From IMG/VR virus record IMGVR_UViG_3300025121_000282, positions 124,001-188,000 of that record: a DNA stretch of 64,000 nt; one strand, given 5' to 3'. Both the position numbers and the translations under genes were made by a program. Of this stretch, positions 4,221-54,415 are shown piece after piece. The notes below the pieces were generated by a model. It was given only the letters and a program-made list of their open reading frames with translations. It did not search any database and had not been told where the DNA came from. The first letter of the stretch is position 1, and each line of letters begins with the position of its first letter.

Positions 4221-4478
4221 ATGGCGAAATTGTCCACACTATCTGACGCTCTTCGTTGGCCGGATAGTGTGGAAGAACGCGTTGCACAGCTTCGGGCCAT
4301 TGTCGCACAGAAGCAGTACCGGAATTACCAGGACATGGTTCTGGACCTGTTTACTGCTTCTGCCATTCTCGTTGTGTATGACAGCTTGAATGATAAGAAC
4401 AAGTTGAATCTTATCTCCCGCCCTCTGCGCGAAATGGCAGATATCGCTTTCCGGGTCTACGGGCTTACCAGCAATTAA
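4221..4478 (+). CDS. hypothetical protein resembling a domain of large myovirus proteins
   Basis: LDLFTASAILVVYDSLN motif (recalled, unverified); leader-like N-terminus. Confidence 0.6.
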   Translation: MAKLSTLSDALRWPDSVEERVAQLRAIVAQKQYRNYQDMVLDLFTASAILVVYDSLNDKNKLNLISRPLREMADIAFRVYGLTSN

Positions 4479-4498
4479 CTACCAGGAGGTTATCTACA

Positions 4499-4891
4499 AT
4501 GTCTGATTTTACTTATTCCGTAACTCAGTGGGAAGAGTACCGTGTTGGTCAGGTGGTCCGCATCGACACCATCGGTGCGTTCAACGACTGTGTCATCATG
4601 GGGTTCACCAAGCCCACTAAGCACGGCGATGTGTACGTAAAGCTTGGGCGGCCCATGGTCCATGTTACGTGCGCCGGCACCACTGGTCCGAGCACGAGCC
4701 TGTCCTGTGAAGAGTTCAGCTGCCTCGCCACCAAGCTCCGTTTTGACACGCTGGTGGACAAGGCCGGGCACTGGATTCATTGCGGACCGAGTCAGGTGGA
4801 TTTCAGCATGCTTTTCGGGGACCCTGTGACCGAAGAGTATGTAAAGTGCATTGCGGACAGAGTGAAACCCAAGGCGAGTAATGACACCTAA
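4499..4891 (+). CDS. hypothetical protein
   Basis: AGGAGG SD. Confidence 0.75.
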   Translation: MSDFTYSVTQWEEYRVGQVVRIDTIGAFNDCVIMGFTKPTKHGDVYVKLGRPMVHVTCAGTTGPSTSLSCEEFSCLATKLRFDTLVDKAGHWIHCGPSQVDFSMLFGDPVTEEYVKCIADRVKPKASNDT

Positions 4892-5078
4892 GTGTTCCCA
4901 ATGTGGCGTCATGTCTGTGCCCGGGGGTTTTCGGTTGAGCGGTGACCTGGGCTACAGTCGTGACTATAAAAATTTGGAAAATTTCTGGTGGAACCGGACA
5001 TTTCGATTGTCCCGTTGTGCTTAGCCTGTTACAGGTTGCTTCGCACCAAGATGAATGGTGCATTTGAGGAGTTCAGCG

Positions 5079-5852
5079 ATGCCCAAAACGATTGTGCACA
5101 ACCTCACCAATAAGGTGGTGGTTATCACCGGTGCCACCTCGGGAAATGGAGAGGCACTTGTATACAAGTTTTTGGCAGCCGGGGCTAAAGTCCATGCTGT
5201 GGGTAGGAATAAAGAGAAGCTGTGGAAACTACAGGACTTGGGGGTTATTGCACACCGGGCGGATTTCTCCAGTCTTTCAGACATCCGCACCCTGGTCTCT
5301 GCTCTGCCTGATAAGATCGATATGCTTTTTCACATGGCCGGGAATGCCATAACTGGGAACGATGAGGACAGGGTGCTTGAATTCTGGATTTCAGATTTCA
5401 CGGGACCCATGCTTTTTCTAAATACAATTCGTCCTCGGATGGCTGGGGGTAGTGTTGTAGCCATAAACACGTCGGCCTCTGTGGGTATGGGTAAAATCCC
5501 CTCGATGCACCAATACCAACTCTGCAAAATGGAGATGGTAAATTGGTGGTGGTCAGTACGGAATGACTGGGCAACATCGGGCATCCACATGATGCTGATC
5601 AGTATGGGGGTTGTAGACACCGCCATCTGGGACAGAACAGATGGCATGGGGACTGCGATCAAGACTTGGGTTAAACTGTTTGCCCCTAAACCCGGCGAGT
5701 GTGTTGACACAGTTATTAGCGATGCCCTGGGAAAAGAACTGGTGTCGTACCCTGGATTGTGGGCCAAATTAGTACCCATTGTGGACGGCAAACCGTGCCC
5801 GAAACCATCACACAAATTCGTAGCCACACTTGTAGCAAGGATGGTAACATAA
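5079..5852 (+). CDS. short-chain dehydrogenase/reductase (SDR)
   Basis: TGATSGNG Rossmann motif, catalytic YQLCK (YxxxK), GAGGAG SD. Confidence 0.85.
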   Translation: MPKTIVHNLTNKVVVITGATSGNGEALVYKFLAAGAKVHAVGRNKEKLWKLQDLGVIAHRADFSSLSDIRTLVSALPDKIDMLFHMAGNAITGNDEDRVLEFWISDFTGPMLFLNTIRPRMAGGSVVAINTSASVGMGKIPSMHQYQLCKMEMVNWWWSVRNDWATSGIHMMLISMGVVDTAIWDRTDGMGTAIKTWVKLFAPKPGECVDTVISDALGKELVSYPGLWAKLVPIVDGKPCPKPSHKFVATLVARMVT

Positions 5853-5856
5853 ATTT

Positions 5857-6201
5857 ATGCTGTACGTATACCTCGTATTGGCCTTTATTGCAGGACTACT
5901 GGTAGGTGGGCTTACAGTCAATTATCTAAAGAAAAGGAAACCACTTACAGCTGAGGACCTACGTGACCTAGAAATCAAAGCCTTACTGCTTTGTGCCGAA
6001 GCCTACGAAGAAACAGCCAGAGTGAATGCTCTCTCGGGTATGGGGACTTACGCAGAAACCGTGCGCAAATTCGCTGAAACCATGCGGGTCAAAGCAGCCG
6101 ATCTACTGAAAGATCCTGCAGAAGTGCCACTACCTGTGCAACGTATTGTGCAATTTTCAGTCCACAACGGTGGCAAGAGCGAACTGGACCCGGGGGCATG
6201 A
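5857..6201 (+). CDS. membrane-anchored hypothetical protein
   Basis: N-terminal TM helix followed by KKRK. Confidence 0.65.
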   Translation: MLYVYLVLAFIAGLLVGGLTVNYLKKRKPLTAEDLRDLEIKALLLCAEAYEETARVNALSGMGTYAETVRKFAETMRVKAADLLKDPAEVPLPVQRIVQFSVHNGGKSELDPGA

Positions 6202-6202
6202 G

Positions 6203-6397
6203 ATGAAAGAGAAGTGTGACGCTGTCCTTGAGTGGGAACAATTTCAGGGGGTCATGACACGCAGAGAGGTGGACGGGGTTTCTTTTTATAATTTCAAGTG
6301 TCCTAAATGTCGTATACACGGTTTTACGGATAAATATTACAAACTGTGCAAAAATCTTACCGCTTTCAATAAAGATTGTATGAAACCCCAACACTAA
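6203..6397 (+). CDS. small Cys-containing hypothetical protein
   Basis: CPKC motif; tiles with neighbours. Confidence 0.5.
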   Translation: MKEKCDAVLEWEQFQGVMTRREVDGVSFYNFKCPKCRIHGFTDKYYKLCKNLTAFNKDCMKPQH

Positions 6398-6417
6398 AGT
6401 AGTGGGGGTCCCACGTA

Positions 6418-6675
6418 ATGAACAAGATAAGTTCAGTTCTTTTTGTTCTAGCTGCTGAGTTTGAAAAGTACCAGCGGGTAGACATGGCAGAACTCAGACC
6501 CTACGTTCCAGGTGAGGACCTGAAGGGTGTATCCATTTCTGAGGCAGATTTGAAAGCCGGGTCGCCCAAACCCGGTGACATGGTTGCCAGAAACCCTAAA
6601 AACTATGATGACACTTGGCTAGTTGCAAAAGAGTACTTTGAAGATAATTTCGACCTAGCCGAAGCAGACCATTAA
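6418..6675 (+). CDS. conserved hypothetical protein (GSPKxGDMxARNP type) carrying an N-terminal leader
   Basis: AELRPY...GSPKPGDMVARNPKN..D.WLVA..YF..NF. Confidence 0.7.
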   Translation: MNKISSVLFVLAAEFEKYQRVDMAELRPYVPGEDLKGVSISEADLKAGSPKPGDMVARNPKNYDDTWLVAKEYFEDNFDLAEADH

Positions 6676-6728
6676 CTCTTGTACCCTCTGGTGTAATAAC
6701 CTCACCAGAAACAAGGAGTTATTTCAAG

Positions 6729-6890
6729 ATGAAAACCTTTGACCCCATCCAGGCTGATCGAGCCGCCGCTCGTCGTCATCACTTTGCTAACAATGGAACT
6801 CTTGCCGCTTGGCGTGGTCGTCCTTGTATCGTTGCCAACAAAAGAGCAGACAAAAATAAGAAACATTGCAGAAAGAGTGGCGGGGACTGA
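6729..6890 (+). CDS. small basic protein (53 aa, not in ORF track)
   Basis: AAGGAG SD; MKTFDPIQADRAAARRHHF...; stop overlaps the next ATG. Confidence 0.65.
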   Translation: MKTFDPIQADRAAARRHHFANNGTLAAWRGRPCIVANKRADKNKKHCRKSGGD

Positions 6891-7345
6891 TGTTTAAGGT
6901 CGTAATTGGAGGGAAAGTTATAAGTTTAACAGGTCACCCAATTGAAGACCTTGTAGACCAGACCTGCAGTATACTCCAAGTTACAAAAGAGGACTTTTTA
7001 ACTCGTGACTTGATTCAAGCAGTAGCCCACCAGTACCTCAGGTTCCACTATCTGGATTTGCCCTTCTTTTACTCCAGCACAGTTAGAGACGTATTGTTAG
7101 GTGCGGGATGGCTAATAAACGATACCTCGATTTTAGTTCGAATAAGAGAAGTAGGGGAAGAGGCTATTGCCCAATTTTCTGGAGAAGTGGATGGCCACAA
7201 AATAGGTGACATTGTCACCCACGGGCGGGACGAGGTGTGGATGGGGCCCATTGTACTAATTTGTAGGATGGGTAACGTCTGGGGTGCCAGCATTTGTCAC
7301 ATGGGCTCTTGGTTTCCACTGAGTGAGATTACAAAATGTCCGTAG
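6890..7345 (+). CDS. hypothetical protein
   Basis: TGATG overlap with the upstream gene. Confidence 0.6.
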   Translation: MFKVVIGGKVISLTGHPIEDLVDQTCSILQVTKEDFLTRDLIQAVAHQYLRFHYLDLPFFYSSTVRDVLLGAGWLINDTSILVRIREVGEEAIAQFSGEVDGHKIGDIVTHGRDEVWMGPIVLICRMGNVWGASICHMGSWFPLSEITKCP

Positions 7346-7536
7346 AAAAAGCGCTTCAACGGCCTATAAACTACAGTGCCGTGGATACGAGTGAACAATA
7401 CCGGGTGGACAAAAAGCTAGGGATTTTGGACTGGGAGCCAACAGCCAAGGAGGCCAGAGAATACTCCCGAAAGCGAAGCGAAATGGGCGACCCTGAGTAC
7501 ACAGGGTTGGACAATGACATAGCTTCCAATTTTTAG
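7336..7536 (+). CDS. hypothetical protein
   Basis: Tiled ORF. Confidence 0.55.
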   Translation: MSVEKALQRPINYSAVDTSEQYRVDKKLGILDWEPTAKEAREYSRKRSEMGDPEYTGLDNDIASNF

Positions 7537-7546
7537 AGGTTGTTTT

Positions 7547-7777
7547 GTGAAGGCAACACTAGAATTTGACCTAAGCGACCCCCAAGGCAAAGATGACTTG
7601 AACTGTGCCATATGTGGTCAAGACATACGAGCGGTAATTCTCAAAGTGCTGGAAAACCTAAGAAATAAACGCAAGCACGCTCAGCTTCCCAGGAATCAAA
7701 TCAAACTTATAGAAACACTGGAAACTGATGTAAGAGAATTGATCATGGACCACAAATTAACCGACCTGTTCTATTGA
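7547..7777 (+). CDS. hypothetical protein
   Basis: MKATLEFDL start; GAGG SD. Confidence 0.65.
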   Translation: MKATLEFDLSDPQGKDDLNCAICGQDIRAVILKVLENLRNKRKHAQLPRNQIKLIETLETDVRELIMDHKLTDLFY

Positions 7778-7828
7778 CCAATTATAAACAGAATAGAACT
7801 CCCCCATAACAGGAGGTGATTATAAACT

Positions 7829-8095
7829 ATGCGATCCCCCATCATGTACGATACTGGAACTCCAGAAGGTTTTATTGAAGCGGTAGAAGGCGCTCTGAAC
7901 AAACGCCAGAGGATCAAGGTCACATATCCCGATGGGTGGTCCGAATCAGGATACATCGGTTGGTCTACGGGTTCTCAGAAGGCCATGCTTCTGGCATATA
8001 ACTCTCGCTCCATGGGTGGAGGTAGCATTCGTACCGATCAAGTGGTCAAGGTAGAGACCACCCGAGGTAAACAAGTTTTGTGGGAAAAGAAGTGA
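7829..8095 (+). CDS. conserved phage hypothetical protein
   Basis: AGGAGG SD, promoter at 7774, GYIGWSTG...RSMGGG. Confidence 0.75.
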   Translation: MRSPIMYDTGTPEGFIEAVEGALNKRQRIKVTYPDGWSESGYIGWSTGSQKAMLLAYNSRSMGGGSIRTDQVVKVETTRGKQVLWEKK

Positions 8096-8134
8096 GTTTG
8101 TATAGTTACCCACAACTTTCTAAGTGGGTAACTA

Positions 8135-8674
8135 ATGAAGCGCAAGCTTGCAGCAGAGGGTGGGGTTAAAGACGAGTGGAGAACACCACCCGCTCTCTTT
8201 GAATTTTGCGACCAGTTTATGGGTTGGATGTGTGGAATAAACATCAGCCTTGATGCTGCAGCCAACGACAACAACACAAAGTTTTCTGCAAATTTTATCA
8301 CTAAGGAACAGGACTCCCTAGTCCAGAACTGGAGTGATTTTTGCCCTAAAAATAAGGGCATATTCATAAACCCTCCGTTTAGCAGAGTTTATGACTTTGT
8401 AGGCAAGATTAAGAGGTCCTCAGAACAAGGCTTGTCTACAGTAGCCATCCTGCCAGGGACGTGGTGTGTCCGGTGGATGCATCAGTTCGTGTTCGGGTCT
8501 GCTAGTCACATTTTGGTCCCCAACAAACGTCTCGCGTACCTGGACTGTAATGGGGACAAACAGAATTCTCCCAATTTTGAAACCATCATAGTACTTTGGG
8601 ACGCACTCAGCCATCCCAACACTCCCAGGGTGAGACCTCTCATCGTCAAACCAGACGGAACGTATTCTATCTAG
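8135..8674 (+). CDS. phage N6-adenine DNA methyltransferase (Dam-like)
   Basis: DEWRTP, LDAAA..N.K, catalytic NPPF, R..Y motifs. Confidence 0.85.
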   Translation: MKRKLAAEGGVKDEWRTPPALFEFCDQFMGWMCGINISLDAAANDNNTKFSANFITKEQDSLVQNWSDFCPKNKGIFINPPFSRVYDFVGKIKRSSEQGLSTVAILPGTWCVRWMHQFVFGSASHILVPNKRLAYLDCNGDKQNSPNFETIIVLWDALSHPNTPRVRPLIVKPDGTYSI

Positions 8675-8722
8675 TATTAACTATTAGGTCACACATCTGT
8701 AATTATAACACAGTAGTACAGT

Positions 8723-9088
8723 ATGGCAGAACCTGAATTTTTGACTTGGCTCACTAATGCTCTCAGTGGTTTTCAAGCAGTAGATTCTCTATTAGCGGGT
8801 GAGTTTAAACATTCTGGTGCAGTTTGGCTTTACGACAGTCCTCAAATTGTAGGCATTGCTCACACTGCCCCCAAATGGTTACTAGCCAAGTCTTAGCTGC
8901 CTCACGTTAATTGGAAGGACGACCCAGTACTGCTGGGTTTTGTGCAGCAGGCTGTCCACGCCTCGTTGATGAACCTAGCAGCCAAACGCCCCTACAGGGA
9001 AGCAATTTTGGCAGGTCTCGGCCTTGAAGAGACTCACGCCCATCATCCTATGTACAGGACTCAAAATGCAACTGAGCAGCTACTTTGA
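8723..9088 (+). pseudogene. hypothetical gene with an in-frame TAG at 8894-8896
   Basis: 121-codon frame filling the gap and overlapping the next start; single internal amber. Confidence 0.5.
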
Positions 9089-9575
9089 GGCTTTTCCTGA
9101 GGCTGAAAAGTATCGAGGCTACATAGAGACTCATACTTCCAGGCACTTGCCGAGCGGCGTTTTTGTATTTACTTCAGAGAGTTCACACAACTGGTCTGGT
9201 CCTTTTCCGGGCCATGCAGCCGTTTGGGTAATACAGAGAAGTGTAGGCTGTCCGCCAACCTCCCAAGTATTGATGGAAGTAACAAATAAACTTACTCATC
9301 TTGCAGAAAGGGGCAAGCTGGAGTACCGTGCCGGATTTGCAGCAGACTTATTGAAGATCGAATCCGGTGACCACACCCTGCTCCACCAGTACTCGGGGTG
9401 GGGTACCCTGGAATACCCCTTCCGCATCTGGGTCATGGGAAATGACGACACTAGTTATTCTAAGTGGTTTAGAAGTCTAGAAGAGGCCAAAGACACTGTT
9501 AGCCTACTTGAGGCTAATGAGCCATTGGACTTCATCACAGACTTCTTGTCTTTAGGGTGGACATTTACAAACTAG
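9066..9575 (+). CDS. hypothetical protein
   Basis: AGGA SD; 169 aa. Confidence 0.65.
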   Translation: MQLSSYFEAFPEAEKYRGYIETHTSRHLPSGVFVFTSESSHNWSGPFPGHAAVWVIQRSVGCPPTSQVLMEVTNKLTHLAERGKLEYRAGFAADLLKIESGDHTLLHQYSGWGTLEYPFRIWVMGNDDTSYSKWFRSLEEAKDTVSLLEANEPLDFITDFLSLGWTFTN

Positions 9576-9966
9576 GAGTTACAATAACCAATTTAGGTCA
9601 GGTTTTCCAATTCATAAGCTCAAGAATACTTGAGTTGGAAACACTTATAAGAGAGAACACCAGAGAAAGGGATATATGGCTGATCCACACACGTGAGGTG
9701 GGATTAAAGCCTGATAGCTCTACACCCGGAGTAGTCTCGTTGGTTTCTCCGTCCATGTTCTTTTACGTTGAGAACCGGATTGTAGCTACGCTCAATAAGT
9801 CTGAAGAAGCTCGGCGGGAAATAGATTTGTTAAGGGCATACAGGGCAAGTCTGTCTCCTTGTTATAACTGCGGTGGAAAAGGTGATATTTTATTTTATTT
9901 TATTTCGCACAGGCCGACGCTCATTTTGAGAAATGCCCTAAGTGTAATGGTTCAGGTCGTCCATGA
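9557..9966 (+). pseudogene. coiled-coil protein with a DnaJ-type CxxCxGxG zinc finger, frameshifted in (TATTT)4
   Basis: CYNCGGKG in one frame and CPKCNGSG in another; the repeat at 9886-9905 lies between them. Confidence 0.6.
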
Positions 9967-10220
9967 AGTACAGCGGATCAGAAATGGTTATAGACTCGAC
10001 CCCTCCCAGGGAGTTTAACCAGTTGTACCGTGGGTACCTGGAAGGAGCCGTTGTGGACACCACTTTCCTGCCCAAGTGGGGTGGCTATTCAGACGCTATT
10101 CGTAAGGATTGGGTTAGAATTGTCAAGCTGCCTCGGTGCCACCATCACAAGTACCGTTGTCGTAGTATTGACTCTGACGGACTAGTAGCAAATGGGTGTA
10201 AACGTGAAAAGCTGGCTTAA
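9963..10220 (+). CDS. hypothetical protein
   Basis: ATGA overlap. Confidence 0.5.
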   Translation: MKYSGSEMVIDSTPPREFNQLYRGYLEGAVVDTTFLPKWGGYSDAIRKDWVRIVKLPRCHHHKYRCRSIDSDGLVANGCKREKLA

Positions 10221-10509
10221 GCCTATCCCCGTGATAGCGTTCCTGACTCTACTTGGGATGGGGTTTGTAGACTGGTGGTTGTCTACTCAACCCATGCCAG
10301 ATCGTGCCCACTGGGTCCACCATGGGTTTATAGCATTTCTCAGCCTGGGGTTTGTCATTGCTATCTGGAAGATCAGTAGAACTTGTGATGCCCGGCATCC
10401 ACATGAGAACTTCCAGTGTATTTTAACAAAGGGACACCAGGGCTGTCACACGGGAATTTACATACGTACAGAGAAAGTAGAATGGTGGACAGACGATGGC
10501 CAAAGATGA
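10192..10509 (+). CDS. membrane protein (2 TM) with C/H-rich tail
   Basis: Two hydrophobic segments; C..GH.G.H. Confidence 0.6.
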   Translation: MGVNVKSWLKPIPVIAFLTLLGMGFVDWWLSTQPMPDRAHWVHHGFIAFLSLGFVIAIWKISRTCDARHPHENFQCILTKGHQGCHTGIYIRTEKVEWWTDDGQR

Positions 10510-10980: not shown

Positions 10981-10994
10981 TTGTATACTTTTGT

Positions 10995-11492: not shown

Positions 11493-11532
11493 TATCACGA
11501 TTAACCGTTTCAAGTCGTAGTAGAATTATAAC

Positions 11533-25057: not shown

Positions 25058-25291
25058 TTAGTATCCGAGGTATTTGAATTCTAGAGGTTCAATCTCACCC
25101 AGTTCGTTCCAAATCCGTTTCCAGTCTTTACCGTCCTCAGTTTCCATATCAATAAGGCTTATGGCATCGTCCTGGAGCTTGTCTAAATCAAGCTTGAATT
25201 GTCTTACAAGCTTCTTACGCTCCGACAATGACAAACTAGGCGCTTCAAAACCACCAGCAGCTTCTCGAAGTTGAGCAGAGAGTCTTTTCAT
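25058..25291 (-). CDS. hypothetical protein with the shared N-terminal leader
   Basis: AAGGAG SD; MKRLSAQLREAAG. Confidence 0.7.
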   Translation of the reverse strand: MKRLSAQLREAAGGFEAPSLSLSERKKLVRQFKLDLDKLQDDAISLIDMETEDGKDWKRIWNELGEIEPLEFKYLGY

Positions 25292-36051: not shown

Positions 36052-36074
36052 TATTTTTGTGTTAGTCTAGGAGT

Positions 36075-36536
36075 ATGAACAAACTATCTTCTATCCTCCG
36101 AAACACTGCTCTCAATTTTGACCCAACTCTGTTCGAAGAGGCTAAGAAAAATGCTTCCAAGACCAAATGGGTAAAACCATCGATTTCAGAAGAAATTGAA
36201 GAATTAGAGCGTACTGCTGAAGAAGAGGGTATAGCTCTTGAAGTATTGTTACAGGCCTGTGAAACAGCTAAACTTGTAACCCTGACTGATGACGTATGGT
36301 CTCAACTCGACAACTCGTGGTCGTGGGAAACTGAAACTATAGAGTTGGCAATCGAGTACGCCGACGAGATTGGTAGAGACACAACCCGCATTCTTAGAGG
36401 TGTGGGTGGGACACTGCCTGCCCCTATGGTATTGTTTCGTGAAGGGCACAATCCCTACCTGATAGGGGGAAACACCAGATTATCGGTGTTTAGAGCCCTA
36501 AATGCAACTCCCAAGGTGCTGGCCGTCCATATTTGA
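36075..36536 (+). CDS. ParB/Srx-like domain protein with the shared N-terminal leader
   Basis: LPAPMVL......YLIGGNTRL; starts MNKLSSILRNTA. Confidence 0.6.
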   Translation: MNKLSSILRNTALNFDPTLFEEAKKNASKTKWVKPSISEEIEELERTAEEEGIALEVLLQACETAKLVTLTDDVWSQLDNSWSWETETIELAIEYADEIGRDTTRILRGVGGTLPAPMVLFREGHNPYLIGGNTRLSVFRALNATPKVLAVHI

Positions 36537-36550
36537 GGCATAAGGTTACC

Positions 36551-36943
36551 ATGGACAAAATTGTAAAAGCTGAGGACTTAGACCAGTGGGGCGATGACTA
36601 CGCTGGCACCATTCGGGACCTTTTTGCTGAAAACTACATGGCCATTGCGCCATATGAGCACCCATATGAGGCTTTAGTAAACGAGGATGGTGACATTCTT
36701 GGGGCCTCCACCTTTGGATTTAGACATAGGGATGAAGGAAGTTTTTCCATAACTGTGACCCCAGATGCCCGTCGTCAGGGTGTGGCTAAAAAACTAGTTC
36801 AAAGTATTGTGGACCAGCACAAAAATACCACGCTTAGGCCCTGGGTTGTGAACCCTGTTATGGCCCACTTACTTGAAGGAATGGGCTTTGAGCCTGATGG
36901 GGAATGGTCTCAAGATAATCCGTACATGGAAAGAACACCATAA
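36551..36943 (+). CDS. GNAT-family N-acetyltransferase
   Basis: FSITVTPDARRQGVAKKLV, VVNP.M..LL..MGF. Confidence 0.75.
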   Translation: MDKIVKAEDLDQWGDDYAGTIRDLFAENYMAIAPYEHPYEALVNEDGDILGASTFGFRHRDEGSFSITVTPDARRQGVAKKLVQSIVDQHKNTTLRPWVVNPVMAHLLEGMGFEPDGEWSQDNPYMERTP

Positions 36944-43451: not shown

Positions 43452-43505
43452 TTAAAATAGATGTTTTGTGGGTGGTGAGACCTACCAACATAGGGAGACC
43501 CCACA

Positions 43506-43925
43506 ATGGACAAAACATCTGGCGCTCTGCGCGACATTGTAAAAAGCCCAAAACTCAAAGAGATAGAGACACTCCTGGCGAAGCGACTTACCCAGGACTT
43601 ACCCAAAGCCCTGGAGAACATGGGCTGGAAGTTTCTGAGTTCTTGGGCTCCATCCATTCTCAAGGACAGGATTGATAGTTCTTCTTCCGCCAGGAAAGCT
43701 GTAAACGATTTGAGACTGGTGGCTGACTCCGTGGAACGCAGCGAATCGGCTACCGACAAACAAAATTATAAGCGAACCATGGCTATTTTCCATCATTTGA
43801 TTTCTGCCCTGAGTGTATACCAGGAAATCTTCTTCGAAGACCAAGATAAATATATTGAGGACTACTTGTCTGATAGGGTGTGGGACAAGTTTTTGAGTTA
43901 CACCGGAACAGTCGCAGGGGAATAG
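43506..43925 (+). CDS. helical protein with a leader-like N-terminus
   Basis: GGGAG SD; MDKTSGALRDIVK. Confidence 0.65.
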   Translation: MDKTSGALRDIVKSPKLKEIETLLAKRLTQDLPKALENMGWKFLSSWAPSILKDRIDSSSSARKAVNDLRLVADSVERSESATDKQNYKRTMAIFHHLISALSVYQEIFFEDQDKYIEDYLSDRVWDKFLSYTGTVAGE

Positions 43926-47437: not shown

Positions 47438-47494
47438 CTGTTTCCGCCGTTAGTTGAATAACTGTGTAACTATTATCCTGAGGAGAATCCTGAA

Positions 47495-48332: not shown

Positions 48333-48680
48333 ATGAGCCTTTATTGGTGTACCCGGCATGCTGCGCACCCTCCCGGTTCTGAGGGGTATGCTGACTCTTT
48401 CCTCCGACGAGAGGGAGTTCTGATTCAGGCGGGCTATGAGGAAGCGGCATTTGATGCTATGGAGAGCATGTACCCAAATGACTGCTTGGAATCGCCACTT
48501 AAACTCAGGTTTATGGTGTCACCATTCAAAAAATGGTACGAAGCATACCGGAAATGGGTCTCAGCAAACGGATGGTGTGCTAAGTGTACTCGTCCGTGGC
48601 AAGAAAGTATCTGCATCTGTGGGAATTTCCACAGAGTACCAGAGGGGCTCTTTTGTCTTACGGACGAAGACGTGGGTTGA
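48333..48680 (+). CDS. hypothetical protein with zinc-binding C-terminus
   Basis: CAKC...CIC. Confidence 0.55.
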   Translation: MSLYWCTRHAAHPPGSEGYADSFLRREGVLIQAGYEEAAFDAMESMYPNDCLESPLKLRFMVSPFKKWYEAYRKWVSANGWCAKCTRPWQESICICGNFHRVPEGLFCLTDEDVG

Positions 48681-48697
48681 CCCCACGTCTTCGTCCG
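48661..48697. repeat. perfect 16-bp inverted repeat whose loop is TTGAC
   Basis: CGGACGAAGACGTGGG-TTGAC-CCCACGTCTTCGTCCG. Confidence 0.9.
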
Positions 48698-48742
48698 GTG
48701 AAGAATCCTAGACATCAATCAACTATAAGGACATTATTCACA

Positions 48743-49090
48743 ATGAAGACCGCTTACCTCATCGCCACCCTGGACACCTCAGTCTGCCCTCCCATCGTTG
48801 TCAAGGTCAACACCTACTCCGAGGCCAACCCTACGGTCATGGGGCGGATGACAAATGCGGTTCTGCTCAGCGTGAATGGCTCAGACCTGGATGAGGCCTT
48901 CGACACCATCGAAGTCACGGTGAGGAACCACCCGTCGTATGCCTGGGTCAAGCCCTACATGCCCAAGACCGAGAATGGGCGTAACGATTTTACGGCCTCA
49001 ATCCGATTTCAGGACTACCTCCGCGGTTTCAAGTCCCGGATGGTCTGCTGGAGCCGAACCCGTACTGCTGCCAAGCTGCTGAAAGGGTAA
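48743..49090 (+). CDS. hypothetical protein
   Basis: AAGGA SD. Confidence 0.7.
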   Translation: MKTAYLIATLDTSVCPPIVVKVNTYSEANPTVMGRMTNAVLLSVNGSDLDEAFDTIEVTVRNHPSYAWVKPYMPKTENGRNDFTASIRFQDYLRGFKSRMVCWSRTRTAAKLLKG

Positions 49091-49095
49091 ATCCG

Positions 49096-49440
49096 ATGGA
49101 AGTCACTGATGAGAGAAAAGTGTATGTTGTCCACCACAACATTGGTATGCCAGAGGCATACCCTGGTACTTACGTTGCTATGTGTCTGATCGAGGCCACA
49201 GCAATTCGACTTGCCAGGGGTAAGGGCCCTCAGGGTGCTAATGACGACATTTCCCACGCTTGCGCCAAACTGATTGATGGAACGTGGTACGCCCCGATCA
49301 CACTGCTGAAACCCACAGACGAGGACACAAGACATCAAAATCACAAAGACAGTGTGGCAGCAGTGATGGCTAAAGCCCGCGCAGCAGGCCTAACCAGCGA
49401 AGAAATCTCCCTCTTGAAGTCTGAAGGATTAACAAAATGA
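49096..49440 (+). CDS. hypothetical protein, distant paralog of 19647..20102
   Basis: VYVVH...A.RLARGKG..G...AGLTSEEI..L. Confidence 0.7.
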   Translation: MEVTDERKVYVVHHNIGMPEAYPGTYVAMCLIEATAIRLARGKGPQGANDDISHACAKLIDGTWYAPITLLKPTDEDTRHQNHKDSVAAVMAKARAAGLTSEEISLLKSEGLTK

Positions 49441-49718
49441 ACCTCGCCGAGAAGTATACTGGCAAGACGTTTGTTTTCCATTCCCCGTTCGAGTCGACTC
49501 CCGGCTGGAAGGATGGAGACAGGGGAGAACTTGTCCGACTGATTCCCGAAGGAACGGAGGGCGTGGAAGAGGGCGTTGGTGACCTGTGGATTGGTCGCAA
49601 TCTGGGCTCTGGTGAAGAACATCAGCTTTGGGGTGGAGAAGCCTTCACCGAAACTGGCGAACCTGTAATCTACGAGCACGCGTTCACAAACTGGAAACCG
49701 TCTACGTCGAGAAAGTAA
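49437..49718 (+). CDS. hypothetical protein
   Basis: ATGA overlap. Confidence 0.6.
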   Translation: MNLAEKYTGKTFVFHSPFESTPGWKDGDRGELVRLIPEGTEGVEEGVGDLWIGRNLGSGEEHQLWGGEAFTETGEPVIYEHAFTNWKPSTSRK

Positions 49719-49721
49719 CAC

Positions 49722-50399
49722 ATGGACATTTATCTTGTGCGACATGGCGAGTCAATGGGCAATGTGAACCACAAGGTTCATGAAACCACAGCCGACCACG
49801 CCATCCCGCTTTCATCTGATGGTTTCATGCAGGCTGCAAAAGCGGGAAACTGGCTCAAAGACAATCTCCCCGACCGGAGTTCTCTTGGATTTTTCAGCCG
49901 GGGTCCTAAGAGAACCCACAGGCGGTTGTGGAGTTCCCCCTACCTTCGTACCCGTCAAACGGCAAAGGTCATTCACGAAGTGGTTGGGGAACCTCTGATC
50001 ACGGATTATAAGGAGCACGTCCTGCTTTGTGAACAGCAATTTGGGCTCTTTGACGGTGTGCCTGATGAGGAGTTGCCGGTCAAGTACCCAAACGAGCATG
50101 CCCACTACGCAAAGTGCGAAAAGTTTGAAGGTCGCTTTTTCGCCCGTCTTCCGCTCGGAGAAAGTAGGTTTGATGTAGCTCAGCGAGTACATCAGGCATT
50201 TGGCACTCTTCATAGGGACGCTCAGCGGAATAACATTCACGACCTTGTCATTGTGGCCCATGGGGTGACAATCCGCGCTTTTGTGATGATGTGGTTCAAC
50301 CTACCTTATGAATGGTTTGAAGCTGAACCCAACCCGAAAAATTGTTCAATCCGCCATATTACTGACGGTAAAGACAAGGGTTATGTCTTCACTCCGTAA
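49722..50399 (+). CDS. histidine phosphatase (phosphoglycerate mutase-like) family protein
   Basis: LVRHGES, SSPYLRTRQT, L.EQQFG, GES, VAHG. Confidence 0.9.
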   Translation: MDIYLVRHGESMGNVNHKVHETTADHAIPLSSDGFMQAAKAGNWLKDNLPDRSSLGFFSRGPKRTHRRLWSSPYLRTRQTAKVIHEVVGEPLITDYKEHVLLCEQQFGLFDGVPDEELPVKYPNEHAHYAKCEKFEGRFFARLPLGESRFDVAQRVHQAFGTLHRDAQRNNIHDLVIVAHGVTIRAFVMMWFNLPYEWFEAEPNPKNCSIRHITDGKDKGYVFTP

Positions 50400-50471
50400 T
50401 TGACGGTATGTTCTTCTGTGTGAATTATACTGTAGAGACAGTAATCAACCAATTATAGGAACTACCTAAAA

Positions 50472-50972
50472 ATGCAAAATGCTCGCGTACTCGTTTTCGT
50501 TGACGGGGCCAACATCATGGCCCAGGCGCAAGACTTTTCTCGTCGCCCCAACTTCCGTACGTTGATCGACAGTTGTGTGGGCCACAATTTCCTGGTAGAC
50601 GCCTACGTCTACCTTCCGCTTCCCCACACCAATGGGGAGGGCGTTCTCCGCTTTCACGACCACCTCCGCTCCATGGGGTTGCAGGTTGTCGCCAAACGGG
50701 CGAAGATGCTCCCTGACGGGACCACCAAGTGTGACATGGACATGGAACTCGGGATGGACGCCATGGAACTGTGCCAGGACATCAAGCCCGACATGATGGT
50801 CCTGGCCTCGGGTGACGGGGACTTTGCCCCGCTCATCCAGCGTATCCGTCGTCGTGGAATTGTGACGGCTGTGGCGTCATGCCATGGTAGCTTAGCCAAC
50901 GAGCTTCGGCTCGTCTCCCAGAATTTCGTTGACCTTACCAAGTGGCGTGAATCTCAGAAAGAAAACCAGTAA
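50472..50972 (+). CDS. NYN domain (LabA/DUF88, PIN-like) nuclease
   Basis: FVDGANI, K.D.D..L..D, LASGDGDFAP, S...L. Confidence 0.85.
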   Translation: MQNARVLVFVDGANIMAQAQDFSRRPNFRTLIDSCVGHNFLVDAYVYLPLPHTNGEGVLRFHDHLRSMGLQVVAKRAKMLPDGTTKCDMDMELGMDAMELCQDIKPDMMVLASGDGDFAPLIQRIRRRGIVTAVASCHGSLANELRLVSQNFVDLTKWRESQKENQ

Positions 50973-50998
50973 TTACAACCATAGGGGGCTATTTTAGT

Positions 50999-51259
50999 AT
51001 GAAAACTTTTACAATCTCGGTAACTGTAACCCTAAGCTTCGATGTCATTGCTCTCAACCAGGAAGAAGCGGTGGTAAAGGGGCAGAAGGAACTGAACCGT
51101 TTTGCCTCCAGAAATGATGAGGACCCTGTTTTAGCAGTATCGGAGCTTCTGTCACCCTATTTCAACACGCTGGACACCCCTGAGATCAACCTGTGGCACA
51201 TCACGGACGAGACGGATGGCCCTGGTGTGTCTGACGACAGTGACGTGGAGGGAAAATAA
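50999..51259 (+). CDS. hypothetical protein
   Basis: V.A.NQEEA motif. Confidence 0.6.
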   Translation: MKTFTISVTVTLSFDVIALNQEEAVVKGQKELNRFASRNDEDPVLAVSELLSPYFNTLDTPEINLWHITDETDGPGVSDDSDVEGK

Positions 51260-51261
51260 AA

Positions 51262-51888
51262 ATGAATCCGTTTGGACATCTTGCACTCGCACTCAGCAAG
51301 ACCAATGGTCCTGCCAAAGGTATTGACGAGGCTGTCGGAATCATGAATGCCGTCAACATCGGACTGATTCCTGATTGTGACGTCTTCCGCAAGGCACTCG
51401 CTGCGTGGGGGATCGCAATCAAGGGGAAGGGTGACAACATTAGCAAGATGATTGGATCAGAGCGGACCATGAAAGTGGACCTGCCCAACGGTTGGGAAGC
51501 CCGACCCCATGGTAGTGGTGGCCATAACGCTCTTTTCGACAACTCGGGGGCAACCCGACTCCGGTGGCACATTCACCCCTGGGACCCCATTGCAACCTGG
51601 GTTGAAAATCGCTATTCGATCCGCACCGAGGACCTGTCTGTCTCGAAGGTGGTTTACCGGATTCTCGATGGAGCGGTGGTCATCCATACTTTCCCGTTCG
51701 AATACCCGCACGCTCGAACCATTGCTGACCGGGAAGGTGGAAGGACCTATTACAACCAGCCTGAAGACCGTCAGCAGAGCCGTGCAAATTACATGGCGGG
51801 AGAGGCCGCCCAGGAAATGGCCTCAAAATGGCTCGATGAAAACCGCCCGGGGTGCCGTGATGCCTTGAAATCGTGGAGCATCGATTGA
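51262..51888 (+). CDS. hypothetical protein (208 aa)
   Basis: GGAGG SD. Confidence 0.7.
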   Translation: MNPFGHLALALSKTNGPAKGIDEAVGIMNAVNIGLIPDCDVFRKALAAWGIAIKGKGDNISKMIGSERTMKVDLPNGWEARPHGSGGHNALFDNSGATRLRWHIHPWDPIATWVENRYSIRTEDLSVSKVVYRILDGAVVIHTFPFEYPHARTIADREGGRTYYNQPEDRQQSRANYMAGEAAQEMASKWLDENRPGCRDALKSWSID

Positions 51889-51935
51889 CTTGACGTCTTG
51901 TAGGGTGAAGACTCGTAACAAGGAGTTATAACCCT

Positions 51936-52640
51936 ATGGTCATTTCCGTCGTTTCTGATGTCCACTGTGAGCACGACACCACAAATAAGCTCGCAGCCAT
52001 CCGAGAGATGCCCAAGAAAGAGTTTCTTGTACTGGCAGGCGACATTGGCACCCGGTCGAGCCTGGAGGCCGCTGTTGAGGCCTTCTGTGGCCGCGCAAAC
52101 CATGTCATCATGGTGGCTGGAAATCACGAAGCGTGGGGCCGCACCATTCAGGCTTCACTCGACCAGTGTAAAGAACTGGAATCAAAGTTCCCCAATTTCC
52201 ATTTCCTGAACAACAGTTCCGTCGTGATTGATGGCCAGCGATTCGTGGGCACTTCGTTGTGGTTCCCTGACCACCCTCTCAATTTTGCGTTTCATCATCT
52301 GGATAACGATTTCGCGCGCATTGACAATTTCGTATCTGACGTGTATGCTCACGCGACTGCAGCCAAACGTTATCTGGAAGGAGCCGTTGACACAGACGAT
52401 GTGGTCATCACCCACCATCTTCCGAGCCATGAGTCTGTACACCCCCGGTTCCGTGCGTCTGAGGGAAACAGGTTTTACGTCCACGATGTTTCCCGACTGG
52501 TAGAATACGCTCAGCCGAAGCTGTGGATTCATGGTCACACCCACGACCCCGTGGACTACATGATTGGTGATACCCGAGTAATTTGCAATCCGATGGGGTA
52601 TTATATCTGTCCGATCACAACTGTTGACGTGGAGCAGTAA
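51936..52640 (+). CDS. calcineurin-like metallophosphoesterase
   Basis: SDVH, LAGDI, GNHE, THH.P, HGHTH, NP.GY. Confidence 0.9.
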   Translation: MVISVVSDVHCEHDTTNKLAAIREMPKKEFLVLAGDIGTRSSLEAAVEAFCGRANHVIMVAGNHEAWGRTIQASLDQCKELESKFPNFHFLNNSSVVIDGQRFVGTSLWFPDHPLNFAFHHLDNDFARIDNFVSDVYAHATAAKRYLEGAVDTDDVVITHHLPSHESVHPRFRASEGNRFYVHDVSRLVEYAQPKLWIHGHTHDPVDYMIGDTRVICNPMGYYICPITTVDVEQ

Positions 52641-52641
52641 G

Positions 52642-52920
52642 ATGAACAAACTAACCATCCGTAAACCTACCACCATTCCGCCCGATGTGTACACCCCATC
52701 AAACGATGTTTATGACGGCGATCGGTTGGTTGCGCGCATTCGGGCAACCCACCATATGGGTAGATATCAGATCCTGTGGGTCTTGGGTTGTAGTGGGCTA
52801 AACGCAGAAAAGGTCCCCCAAAACCCCATGTTGATGGAAGAAATCAAATCCGCAATTTGGAAGTTGTGGTCTGAGATCGGGTCTGTGGCTATGGGGGTTG
52901 AAATCCCATCAGTTGATTAG
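52642..52920 (+). CDS. hypothetical protein
   Basis: GGAG SD. Confidence 0.6.
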   Translation: MNKLTIRKPTTIPPDVYTPSNDVYDGDRLVARIRATHHMGRYQILWVLGCSGLNAEKVPQNPMLMEEIKSAIWKLWSEIGSVAMGVEIPSVD

Positions 52921-52960
52921 TGGATTATAAATTTATAAACAGAAAAGGAACACAACAGCC

Positions 52961-53176
52961 ATGAAACTCGAATTCATGACAGTCAAAATTGCAATCCGAA
53001 CGGCCGGGTCCCACAAAACCGGTGCCGATGTGGTTGACTCATGCAACGAACACTTCCGGGCCCTTCGTGACGCGGGCGCCATTGTGGACTGGTGTTACAA
53101 CCCGGATGGCATTGATGGACATGAGACGGTGGAGGCGCCTGAGCCGTACGTGGAAGACAGCGTGTGGTTCCTGTGA
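52961..53176 (+). CDS. hypothetical protein
   Basis: AAGGA SD. Confidence 0.6.
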   Translation: MKLEFMTVKIAIRTAGSHKTGADVVDSCNEHFRALRDAGAIVDWCYNPDGIDGHETVEAPEPYVEDSVWFL

Positions 53177-53421
53177 CTCAAGCCGAAAAACTGACGAAAG
53201 CGTTATTGCTCAGATTCCTCAACCAAAGCTTCGCCTTTGGCTACAACACTACCGTCGAGGTAAAGGGCAAAGAGTGGGATGTTACTTTGAATCAGAAGGG
53301 CCAGATTGTGCTTCGTCCGGTTGATGGCAAGGGTAAAGTCATCAGAATTCACATCACCTTGACAGAACTGCACCCGATTCGACGGGGCGAAGACCTGTTT
53401 AATTTACTCTCGGGGCTGTGA
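53164..53421 (+). CDS. hypothetical protein
   Basis: Tiled ORF. Confidence 0.55.
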   Translation: MVPVTQAEKLTKALLLRFLNQSFAFGYNTTVEVKGKEWDVTLNQKGQIVLRPVDGKGKVIRIHITLTELHPIRRGEDLFNLLSGL

Positions 53422-53425
53422 GAGT

Positions 53426-53980
53426 TTAATTGCCTAAACGCTTGAGGGGCTCACCATTGCGGGTGTATACAGCCTTCTTCTCTACCAAAGACTCAAGCCC
53501 CTTCTTGATTTTATCTTTTGCTTTCTCGCTGAGAAAACCGTTTTCATAATCAGTAGTGTCACCCTCAGAAAGCATGATGTGAACTGAATGCCCAGCAAAA
53601 CTTGGGGCATTCGGCACGTCTCCAAACAACTGGAACTGGTGTTCGTTGCTTAGTGCCTGGAACTTGACGTTCACCTCAGGTAGAAGCCTGCTAACATACT
53701 TTTTAAACTCTTCCTCTAATTTTCGAAGAATAGCTTTGTCGGCCTTGATTTCGTTCCACACAGACGGACCAATGAGGCCTGCCAGCTTCCCGAGCCTTTT
53801 GTAGTCCGAAATTAAGCCATCAATGTCCTCAATTTTTGAGGCTTCTGGCTTCGGAGAGTCTACCACTGTTTTGATAGCTTCCAACAGTTCTTGGGGAGAC
53901 AGCCTCTTAAAGTATACCGTGCGATTTGGCTTGTCCGAACTACCAACTACAGCTTTCAGAGCAGATGCTAGTGTTTTCAT
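53426..53980 (-). CDS. hypothetical protein with the shared N-terminal leader
   Basis: GAGG SD; MKTLASALKAVVG. Confidence 0.7.
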   Translation of the reverse strand: MKTLASALKAVVGSSDKPNRTVYFKRLSPQELLEAIKTVVDSPKPEASKIEDIDGLISDYKRLGKLAGLIGPSVWNEIKADKAILRKLEEEFKKYVSRLLPEVNVKFQALSNEHQFQLFGDVPNAPSFAGHSVHIMLSEGDTTDYENGFLSEKAKDKIKKGLESLVEKKAVYTRNGEPLKRLGN

Positions 53981-53992
53981 TATAGCCTCTGA

Positions 53993-54415
53993 TTATTTGA
54001 ATAGCTTGGTAAAATGATTTGGCCGCATACCCTCGGGTCCTACCCGACGTTCAAATTCCTTTTCTAGGGAAGTTTCTCTTCTTAACTTTGCAATGTCTCC
54101 AGCCTTTATTGTAAAGCTCGTGCCTCTGGAATCAGTAACCAGAGGTACGCTCTCGCCTGTTTCCATACGAGGATAAATGCTGGTGGCTGTTGTAAAACCT
54201 TTTCCATCAGCTGGAAAGATAATCGAATACAACCCCATACTCGGGGACCCGCCATCTCCAAAATCCACTACTCCCACTTTCCCTGTGTGTGGGATGTCTC
54301 GACCGTTGTTATCTTTTACCGAACCCTCTAATCTAAAGAATCCAACACCTAAAGAATCATACTCTGTTTTGTCAGCAGCAATTACACTTCTTAAGGCAGC
54401 AGCTAGTTTTTGCAC
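53993..54415 (-). CDS. hypothetical protein with the shared N-terminal leader (GTG start)
   Basis: AAGGAG SD shortly before GTG 54415; MQKLAAALRSVIA. Confidence 0.7.
   Translation of the reverse strand: MQKLAAALRSVIAADKTEYDSLGVGFFRLEGSVKDNNGRDIPHTGKVGVVDFGDGGSPSMGLYSIIFPADGKGFTTATSIYPRMETGESVPLVTDSRGTSFTIKAGDIAKLRRETSLEKEFERRVGPEGMRPNHFTKLFK

What the first reader, a model, noticed from the sequence alone, without database searches (positions are those of the whole stretch)
4221..54415. A shared 12-13 aa N-terminal leader grafted onto unrelated proteins
Seen in sequence: MNKISSVLFVLAA (6418+), MKRLSAQLREAAG (25291-), MNKLSSILRNTAL (36075+), MDKTSGALRDIVK (43506+), MKTLASALKAVVG (53980-), MQKLAAALRSVIA (54415-) and, more loosely, MAKLSTLSDALR (4221+). 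The consensus is M-x-[KRT]-[LIT]-[SA]-[SAG]-x-L-[RK]-x-h-h-[AG], an amphipathic helix. The downstream bodies are unrelated, and three of the genes run against the dominant + strand. From memory (unverified), homologs of 6418 begin near EF.KY, which would make the leader a modular add-on. Established: T4 internal proteins use a ~10-aa capsid targeting sequence that the prohead protease removes. Inference: an undescribed head-packaging or cleavage tag marking an injected proteome that includes a ParB/Srx-like enzyme.
Basis: partly seen in the sequence, partly recalled or inferred. Interest (0 to 1): 0.75.

Follow-up and report, generated by a model that had tools for sequence, protein, structure and literature searches.

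The report
Shared N-terminal tag in huge phage
About twenty otherwise unrelated small proteins of an uncultured 315-kb groundwater phage begin with the same 11-12-residue basic tag, which looks like an address label for one shared destination; the phage head is my best guess for that destination, but it is untested.

Summary
Six of the seven quoted N-termini exist as written and share M-x-[KT]-L-[SA]-x-x-L-[RK]-x-h-[AV]. The seventh (4221+) is not supported.

- **Generalises:** a matrix built only from the six window sequences finds more members among 326 genes outside the window (5 hits against 0.2-0.3 expected, P<0.0005). In all, 19 genes carry the tag, plus two weak candidates.
- **N-terminal:** the motif is about 40-fold or more enriched at N-termini and sits on 16 distinct body families.
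- **Acts on the protein:** synonymous codon families differ at the conserved positions.
- **Add-on:** 58 homologs of gene 6418+ start exactly where the tag ends.

The genome is a complete huge phage with a 291-aa HK97-fold capsid protein and a probable gp21/assemblin-like prohead protease. Three distant relatives have their own tag "dialects". One orthologous body carries different tags in two of these phages. One dialect is a 30-aa module found in about 3,400 protein clusters. It is absent from Pfam, from solved structures and from other GenBank phages.

Best reading: a modular docking peptide, most plausibly a capsid-targeting signal like the T4 one. The destination is unproven, and no conserved cleavage site was found. 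The complex prediction gave no answer.

The parts
6418..6675 (+). Tagged gene, 85 aa. The leader is codons 1-12 (6418-6453). The body belongs to a widespread ~71-aa family that lacks the leader elsewhere.
   Evidence: alignment A1: homologs start at residue 13-14. No other in-frame start lies before conserved residues Y18-R20. In the AF2 model the body has pLDDT 88-95 and the first 10 residues 54.
25058..25291 (-). Tagged gene, 77 aa. Leader at 25253-25291 (MKRLSAQLREAAG). Nearly the same leader occurs on the unrelated gene at genome 61092(+).
   Evidence: An in-frame stop lies directly upstream.
36075..36536 (+). Tagged gene, 153 aa. Leader at 36075-36113. The folded body is residues ~33-153, with a weak ParB_N-like lead.
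43506..43925 (+). Tagged gene, 139 aa. Leader at 43506-43544 (MDKTSGALRDIVK).
53426..53980 (-). Tagged gene, 184 aa. Leader at 53942-53980. It is adjacent to the next tagged gene, but the two bodies show no similarity.
53993..54415 (-). Tagged gene, 140 aa, GTG start behind AAAGGAG. Leader at 54377-54415.
63440..64000 (-). 3' part of a further tagged gene (218 aa, MRFSSKLKIVAA...). Its start lies 96 bases beyond the window end, at genome position 188096.
4221..4478 (+). It is not a member by the matrix at its N-terminus; a weak internal match lies at aa 19-29.

Best explanation
The 11-12-residue N-terminal sequence is a modular docking peptide. Its pattern is basic, with hydrophobic residues at positions 4, 8 and 11/12. 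The phage has placed it on about 20 unrelated accessory proteins so that they all bind one phage-encoded receptor.

The most likely receptor is the inside of the assembling procapsid (scaffold or HK97-fold shell). The tagged proteins would then be packaged and delivered with the DNA, as T4 internal proteins are through their capsid-targeting sequence.

Shown:
- The motif is real, N-terminal and selected at the protein level.
- It is added onto pre-existing domains.
- It is present in lineage-specific dialects across a clade of huge phages.
- It is exchanged on at least one orthologous body.

Inferred: that it binds a receptor, and that the receptor is in the capsid. Removal by the prohead protease is possible but has no sequence support.
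For: **Enrichment and held-out generalisation:**

**Protein-level selection:** Ser5 is coded by TCT or AGT, Leu by CTN or TTR, Arg by CGN or AGR, and the upstream DNA is not conserved.

**Add-on nature:**
- Alignment A1 of 6418+ with its homologs.
- The body of genome 59726(+) recurs in the relative LR745208.1 behind a different 78-aa N-terminus.
- The leader lies outside the modelled fold.

**Clade level** (MCP 65-70% identical to this genome's):
- LR745208.1 has 11 proteins with a 30-aa leader, and the 9 checked have unrelated bodies.
- G001 has 8 proteins and G003 has 12 with an R-V-A-x-R-[FY] leader, against 0.55 and 0.82 expected.
- The ortholog pair W01_14562 / G001_29954 (45% identity, E 5e-56) carries different leaders.

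**Links to the head:**
- Multi-copy proteins carrying the 30-aa module share linker segments with a head-module gene of LR745208.1 (16 of 162 representatives).
- One 30-aa-leader gene sits between the scaffold-like gene and the gene next to the MCP.
- In two clade contigs the module ends a >1100-aa ORF just upstream of the protease.
- A W01 head-module protein is orthologous to tagged proteins of G001 and G003.
- The genome encodes an HK97-fold MCP without a delta domain, and a probable assemblin/gp21-fold protease.

**Precedent:** T4 Ip1-3 share nothing but an N-terminal leader that directs packaging into the capsid (PMC12373910).
Against: - There is no direct evidence for virion location.
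- The MCP + leader-peptide complex prediction returned 'no answer'.
- No conserved cleavage site follows the leader.
- In this genome the tagged genes are not in the head module. Seven cluster at 55-62 kb, downstream of the replication genes.
- The +/-10 kb around the MCP in 80 relatives' contigs shows no enrichment of the short motif, and only 3 of the 80 carry the long module.
- Homology between the short leader and the 30-aa module is only suggestive: hhalign aligns them in register with P=0.0034, and the long-module HMM does not score the short leaders significantly.
- Part of the R-V-A-x-R-F set in G001/G003 belongs to related families, so some of that conservation may come from paralogy.
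Confidence: 0.4

Rival explanations
1. The tag binds a common partner that has nothing to do with the capsid. Examples are a phage or host chaperone, a protease adaptor (a shared degron for timed turnover), or a hub protein of the infection programme.
For: The same evidence that supports modularity and protein-level selection applies. The tagged genes lie mostly among small accessory genes and not in the structural modules. The capsid complex prediction gave no support.
Against: No candidate partner was identified. Several links of the related 30-aa module to head-module proteins favour the capsid.
Confidence: 0.25
2. The tag is a short amphipathic membrane-targeting helix that places the proteins at the inner membrane.
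For: Net charge is +1 to +4, and hydrophobic residues are spaced i, i+4, i+7/8, with a hydrophobic moment of 1.0-2.1. The length is similar to known membrane-targeting sequences (own knowledge).
Against: The conserved small residues (Ser/Ala at positions 5, 6 and 12) and the invariant Arg/Pro pattern of the related 30-aa module suggest specific protein contacts. There are few aromatic or bulky residues. No hydrophobic stretch is long enough for a Sec signal, and there is no twin-arginine or lipobox motif (sequence).
Confidence: 0.1
3. The tags bind each other (homotypic helix packing), collecting the tagged proteins into one assembly or condensate.
For: Many proteins with the 30-aa module carry two to six copies joined by charged linkers, and some consist of little else (63-86 aa). 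This would suit cross-linking.
Against: Multi-copy architecture fits multivalent binding to a repeated receptor, such as a capsid lattice, equally well. This genome has no multi-copy member.
Confidence: 0.1
4. There is no function: the resemblance comes from chance, from general N-terminal composition bias (A-rich second and third codons), or from hidden paralogy.
For: Lys/Asn/Thr at positions 2-3 is a common N-terminal bias (own knowledge). Two paralog pairs exist among the members.
Against: The column-permutation null keeps the position-specific composition and still gives P<0.0005 on held-out genes. There are 16 body families. The leader is absent from 58 homologs of one member. The same phenomenon occurs in three other genomes.
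Confidence: 0.03
5. The conserved element is in the nucleic acid, for example an operator for a translational repressor or a recombination site at the 5' ends of gene cassettes.
For: The motif sits at the very 5' end of the coding regions. A weak shared upstream TTTTAT is seen in 5 of 13 tagged against 4 of 208 untagged genes (raw p=3e-5, about 0.14 after correction).
Against: The conserved residues use non-interconvertible codon families (TCT/AGT, CTN/TTR, CGN/AGR). The DNA before the start codon is not alignable.
Confidence: 0.03

Closest known systems
Capsid targeting sequence (CTS) of T4-type internal proteins (Ip1-3, Alt)
   Same: A roughly 10-residue N-terminal leader is the only similarity among otherwise unrelated, non-essential, fast-turning-over proteins. 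The genes are scattered and partly clustered. The phage has a gp21/assemblin-fold prohead protease and needs a separate scaffold.
   Different: There is no sequence resemblance: T4's leader is acidic and ends in a L/I-x-E cleavage site, whereas this one is basic and has no conserved site after it. Packaging and cleavage are untested here. The phage is unrelated (291-aa HK97-type MCP, Pol I-type polymerase).
Encapsulin cargo-loading peptides
   Same: A short conserved terminal peptide on diverse cargo enzymes docks onto the inner face of an HK97-fold shell. Multi-copy and either-terminus arrangements occur, as they do for the 30-aa module.
   Different: Encapsulin peptides are usually C-terminal with a G-S-L-type core. 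No encapsulin operon logic is present here, and binding could not be predicted.
C-terminal helix-loop-helix coat-binding domain of P22-type scaffolding proteins, and the shared C-terminal MCP-binding tail of herpesvirus scaffold and protease
   Same: The 30-aa module of the relatives is predicted by its sequence pattern to be a basic helix-turn-helix. It occurs at the ends of highly charged, scaffold-like proteins that share segments with head-module genes.
   Different: No structural or sequence homology has been shown. The short leader of this genome would correspond to the first helix only.
The uncharacterised 30-aa module L-R-x-x-L-I-R-L-A-H-x-x-P-x-L-R-x-x-L-L-P-L-L-K, defined here
   Same: It aligns in register with the short leader (M-x-[TK]-L-[RS]-[SA]-x-L-[IR]-R-h-A). 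It has the same N-terminal position and the same many-unrelated-bodies logic. It occurs in a phage that shares 71 core proteins with this one.
   Different: It is three times longer and far more conserved, and it is often repeated or C-terminal. The statistical link to the short leader is only P of about 0.003.

Membership tests
T4-type capsid targeting sequence system | A conserved ~10-aa N-terminal leader is the only similarity among unrelated proteins of one phage | tested here: met
   19 genes in 16 body families, with strong N-terminal enrichment.
T4-type capsid targeting sequence system | Leader sequence related to the T4 CTS and ending in the L/I-x-E site cut by the prohead protease | tested here: not met
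   The aligned leaders (A4) are basic, and no conserved residue follows position 12. No L/I-x-E is conserved. Position 28 of the 30-aa module is also variable.
T4-type capsid targeting sequence system | The phage encodes a gp21/assemblin-fold prohead protease | tested here: met
   The 488-aa protein at genome 32032-33498 lies between portal and scaffold-like gene. The top ten VIA matches are all capsid maturation proteases: Z 7.6 to T4 gp21 and 6.2-8.3 to herpesvirus proteases. Foldseek and the Atlas give weak hits of the same kind. His and Ser columns are invariant. Moderate confidence.
T4-type capsid targeting sequence system | Tagged proteins are present in proheads or virions and are injected | not testable with these tools
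   The phage is an uncultured groundwater phage. Only DNA runs hold it.
Encapsulin-type cargo loading | The peptide docks on the HK97-fold shell protein | tested here: inconclusive
   MCP (alignment A6) plus leader peptides (A4): score 0.00 and verdict 'no answer', which the tool says is not evidence either way.
Sec/Tat/lipoprotein signal peptides | A hydrophobic core of ~10 or more residues, a twin-arginine motif, or a lipobox Cys | tested here: not met
   The sequences show alternating polar and hydrophobic residues, with no h-region, no RR-x-F-L-K and no Cys.
30-aa LRxxLIRLAH...LLPLLK module | Significant match to the module profile | tested here: inconclusive
   The HMM gives at most 1.9 bits for any tagged gene of this genome. 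hhalign aligns columns 1-17 to 1-17 with P=0.0034. The short-leader matrix ranks the long leaders as the top 7 N-termini in LR745208.1. phrog_2859 bodies occur behind both kinds of leader.
ParB/Srx superfamily (claim for gene 36075+) | ParB_N fold or profile match | tested here: inconclusive
   No Pfam hit at E<=0.1. Atlas structure TM is 0.41-0.47 to ParB_N clusters, but 0.72 to unnamed viral proteins.

The most novel reading that the evidence does not exclude
A large clade of uncultured huge phages shares a 291-aa MCP that is 65-70% identical to this genome's, found in more than 526 contigs. These phages may run a 'zip-code' system: each lineage uses its own short N-terminal dialect (K-L-S-x-x-L-R-x-x-A; R-V-A-A-R-F; or the 30-aa L-R-S-K-L-I-R-L-A-H...L-L-P-L-L-K module), matched to a co-evolving receptor in the capsid. 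The packaged and injected effector set of an uncultured phage could then be read directly from its sequence. The 30-aa module would be a new, widespread capsid-docking domain, with about 3,400 clusters at 50% identity and no Pfam, PDB or literature record.
Probability: 0.3. Interest if true: 0.85.

Novelty: new variant of a known kind. Interest (0 to 1): 0.74.

Why it matters
If the tag is a packaging signal, it gives a sequence-only way to list the proteins that huge, uncultured phages carry into the cell. Such proteins are the likely first-strike anti-defence and takeover factors. Bodies found behind the related 30-aa module include pentapeptide-repeat, RelA/SpoT-like, WGR and DUF2958 domains.

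It would also provide a short portable tag for loading foreign proteins into large capsids, as the T4 CTS is used.

Whatever the destination, the work defines two things not in any library I searched:
- a genome-wide N-terminal motif carried by about 4% of this phage's genes;
- a 30-residue module present in thousands of metagenomic protein clusters.

Leader-GFP recruitment to co-expressed head proteins would test the idea directly.

Tried and rejected
**Searches that found nothing**
- megablast and tblastn of window DNA and of tagged proteins against GenBank phages.
- IMG/VR scans with single tagged proteins or with TerL.
- A word-based homolog search for the 224-aa tagged protein, which returned only itself.
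- PHROGs and Pfam on the tagged proteins: nothing except phrog_2859 for one weak member.
- Pfam prohead-protease models S77 and S78 on the genome. The protease was later found by fold.
- Literature searches for the motif strings, the relative's accession, and phage cargo-targeting terms. They gave no description of this tag, only T4, P1 and SPN3US background.
- The 30-aa module profile against PDB sequences, which returned only chance-level matches with E>0.4.
- The tool's own profile search of five clade genomes for the 30-aa module. It was empty, but it was run without a positive control.

**Tests that gave no answer**
- MCP + leader complex prediction.
- Search for RNA runs: only DNA metagenomes hold the phage, so I did not lay reads.

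**Ideas rejected**
- C-terminal enrichment of the short motif in this genome: 2 against about 0.5 expected, not significant.
- A shared promoter: the TTTTAT signal does not survive correction.
- A general strand bias.
- A conserved cleavage site after the leader.
- Enrichment of the short motif, or regular presence of the long module, next to the MCP in 80 related contigs.


Full report
**1. What is there**

The window is bases 124,001-188,000 of a single 314,886-bp virus record, judged 100% complete by CheckV, with 47% G+C. I called 464 genes with my own hexamer/RBS caller. Independent metagenome gene calls agree for the two genes I could compare.

Six fit M-x-[KT]-L-[SA]-x-x-L-[RK]-x-h-[AV]. 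The seventh (4221+) does not score at its N-terminus.

Fifteen of the 19 tagged genes start at the first possible start codon of their ORF. Eleven of them have an in-frame stop only 0-5 codons upstream, so the N-terminal position does not depend on start-site choice.

**2. More than chance**

- A matrix built from the six window sequences, scanned over 326 outside genes, gives 5 scores >=3. Residue shuffling expects 0.20, column permutation (which keeps the position-specific N-terminal composition) expects 0.33, and internal windows predict 0.16. P<0.0005.
- One outside hit (genome 61092+, MNKLSVQLREAAA...) is almost identical to the leader of window gene 25291(-), although the two bodies are unrelated.
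- Allowing the core to begin at residue 2-5 adds 55360+, 61563+, 60158+, 60589+, 105272-, 67007- and 188096-. That gives 19 tagged genes plus two weak candidates.
- A regex count gives 18 N-terminal occurrences against 0.45 expected.
- A blind all-against-all comparison of N-termini returns this family as the largest cluster in the genome.
- After the leader is removed, the bodies fall into 16 BLAST families.
- Seven tagged genes, one of them a weak candidate, lie together at 55-62 kb. The rest are scattered, and three lie in the tail/structural region.

**3. Protein, not DNA**

At the conserved positions the genes use codon families that cannot interconvert by single synonymous steps: Ser is TCT or AGT, Leu is CTN or TTR, and Arg is CGN or AGR. 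The 40 bases upstream do not align. Selection therefore acts on the peptide.

**4. An add-on**

- Gene 6418+ has 58 homologs in public metagenomes, mostly 68-76 aa. They begin M-[ST]-E-F-K-Q-Y-R-R, which aligns with residue 13-14 of the window protein.
- Only a 99%-identical copy of 6418+ shares the 12 extra residues. No alternative in-frame start exists before the invariant residues.
- AlphaFold2 with that alignment folds residues ~20-80 confidently (pLDDT 88-95). It leaves the leader as a low-confidence extension with no assigned secondary structure. The 'amphipathic helix' therefore rests on the i, i+4, i+7/8 residue pattern only.
- The body of genome 59726+ recurs in a relative behind a different 78-residue N-terminus.
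- In 36075+ the structurally conserved part starts near residue 33.

**5. The phage**

- PHROG hits identify a RecD/Dda-like helicase, a DnaB-like helicase, a Pol I-type polymerase and a large terminase.
- The 291-aa protein at 36062-36937 is an HK97-fold major capsid protein (feature score 0.99, TM 0.92).
- The 488-aa protein between the portal and a Pro/Ala/Glu-rich scaffold-like protein has an N-terminal domain whose ten best structural matches are all capsid maturation proteases: Z 7.6 to T4 gp21 and 6.2-8.3 to herpesvirus proteases. His and Ser columns are invariant. I call it a probable prohead protease, with moderate confidence.
- The record comes from groundwater metagenomes.

**6. Relatives have their own tags**

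The nearest GenBank phage record is the uncultured 485-kb LR745208.1 (TerL 42%, MCP 65%, 71 shared proteins).

- The short-leader matrix ranks seven of its proteins first. All seven begin M-(T)-T-L-R-S-K-L-I-R-L-A-H-E-N-P-A-L-R-P-H-L-L-P-L-L-K-E-A.
- A profile of this 30-residue leader finds 11 copies in that genome. Ten are N-terminal, and the nine checked have unrelated bodies.
- In an exhaustive search of 1.84 billion representative proteins, the profile hits 3,400 at E<=0.001 and 446 at E<=1e-10.
- Among the best 162 hits, 135 have an N-terminal copy. Many have further internal or C-terminal copies, and some proteins of 63-86 aa are little more than two copies.
- No Pfam or PHROG family matches more than 2 of the 135 module-bearing proteins scanned, so no library model covers the module. 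The bodies carry DUF7007, DUF7717, RelA_SpoT, pentapeptide repeats, DUF2958, WGR and many unnamed PHROGs.
- The module has no relative among PDB sequences. It occurs in only this one of 50,697 GenBank phage records, and the motif strings appear in no paper I could search.

The MCP lineage is very conserved: 66-70% identity in the 80 contigs fetched, out of 526 IMG/VR relatives, many of them 230-512 kb. Two complete or near-complete members that I fetched each show another dialect near the N-terminus, h-x-x-[RK]-[VI]-[VA]-x-[RK]-[FYW]:

- G001: 8 proteins against 0.55 expected, in 6 body families.
- G003: 12 proteins against 0.82 expected, in 11 body families.

The 30-aa-leader protein W01_14562 is orthologous (45% identity, E 5e-56) to G001_29954, which begins with a G001-type leader. 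The same body therefore carries different tags in different lineages, as expected of interchangeable address labels.

The short leader of this genome aligns in register with the first helix of the 30-aa module (hhalign P=0.0034). The module HMM does not score the short leaders significantly, so common origin is suggestive and not shown.

**7. Where might it point?**

Evidence that bears on the capsid is circumstantial.

- (a) Sixteen of the 162 best module proteins share a non-module segment (…P-[FY]-M-x-G-E-F-T-Q…) with a 192-aa gene that lies between portal and MCP in LR745208.1. The neighbouring scaffold-like protein there shares a second linker motif with some module proteins.
- (b) One 30-aa-leader gene sits in that head module, between the scaffold-like gene and the gene next to the MCP.
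- (c) In two clade contigs an ORF of more than 1,100 aa just upstream of the protease ends in the module.
- (d) A head-module protein of LR745208.1 is orthologous to N-terminally tagged proteins of G001 and G003.
- (e) The MCP has no delta domain, so a separate scaffold is needed, and a maturation protease is present.

Against the capsid reading:
- This genome's tagged genes are not in the head module.
- Related head-module neighbourhoods are not enriched in either the short motif or the long module.
- The one complex prediction (MCP with leader peptides) returned 'no answer'.
- No conserved cleavage site follows either kind of leader.

**8. Mechanism and odds**

My estimates:
- About 0.7 that the tag is a modular docking or targeting peptide for a common partner.
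- About 0.4 that the partner is the procapsid, so that the proteins are packaged and injected.
- About 0.15-0.2 that the tag is then cut off.

Rivals:
- A non-capsid partner, such as a chaperone, degron or hub (0.25).
- Membrane anchoring (0.1).
- Homotypic assembly (0.1).
- Chance or paralogy (0.03).
- An RNA/DNA element (0.03).

**9. Comparison with known systems**

[quoted passage not shown] Membership in that family fails on sequence and on the cleavage motif. Encapsulin cargo peptides and scaffold coat-binding hairpins are the other functional analogues. I therefore file the finding as a new variant of a known kind, not as a member of any described family.

**10. Limits**

- The gene calls are my own.
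- The relatives sampled in full number only three.
- The regexes for G001 and G003 were written after seeing the clusters, though the expected counts come from internal positions of the same proteins.
- Some R-V-A-x-R-F proteins are related to each other.
- There are no expression, proteome or binding data.

Noticed in passing
window 6402-6414 and about 43480-43505: GC-rich inverted repeats (GTGGGGGTCCCAC; GGGAGACCCC) lie directly upstream of the start codons of two tagged genes that lack a Shine-Dalgarno site. They may be hairpins that affect translation or terminate the upstream gene.
   Followed up: no
genome 303660-304421 (-), outside the window (L004:11660-12421): This 253-aa ORF lies just upstream of the tagged paralog pair. 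It contains an internal Met followed by a strong leader match (MKFRTLAASLRKVAAVD, aa 150-166). That suggests a possible internal start or a fused gene.
   Followed up: partly
genome 30372-30995 (+) (L008:10372-10995): A GNAT-like 207-aa protein (Pfam Acetyltransf_1, E 2e-4) is encoded between the portal and the probable prohead protease. Its last 11 residues (KVSSLLRHSLR) weakly resemble the leader.
   Followed up: partly
genome 24999-28199 (+) (L008:4999-8199): The large terminase is 1,066 aa. Its N-terminal half matches helicases of SPO1-like phages. Its first 15 residues (MDVFSDLIRDIVSKS) resemble the leader of window gene 43506+.
   Followed up: no
upstream regions of tagged genes, e.g. 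genome 61092, 61563, 67007, 192712: TTTTAT occurs within 80 bases upstream of 5 of 13 tagged genes that have their own intergenic gap, against 4 of 208 untagged genes (raw p=3e-5, not robust after correction). It could be a shared promoter element.
   Followed up: partly
window 56222-58859 (-): Two large minus-strand genes (507 and 368 aa) look by eye like GMP synthase and IMP dehydrogenase, i.e. a phage-borne guanine nucleotide pathway. I did not check this with any tool.
   Followed up: no
proteins P0078, P0090, P0094, P0137, P0139, P0183, P0213: The charged linkers between copies of the 30-aa module hold other recurring mini-motifs (E-P-D-E-P-Y-M-x-G-E-F-T-Q; G-C-E-K-L-P-E-G-P-M-R-D-N-C; F-E-E-G-x-S-x-D-P-T-x-x-M-S-P-E-D). 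The proteins look like mosaics of short modules.
   Followed up: partly
genome-wide (clusters): Other small N-terminal families exist. Three proteins begin ...HAWFS-x-KQAE-x-AG...RPDGTTY. In all four phages several proteins begin M-P-x-Y-E-Y-x-C-x-x-C, a zinc-ribbon-like motif.
   Followed up: no
LR745208.1 404201-405727 (-) (tile L038, about 4201-5727): This head-module protein of 508 aa combines a HAD-like N-terminal domain, an internal leader-like A-R-N-V-A-A-K-Y and a body orthologous to N-terminally tagged proteins of G001 and G003.
   Followed up: partly
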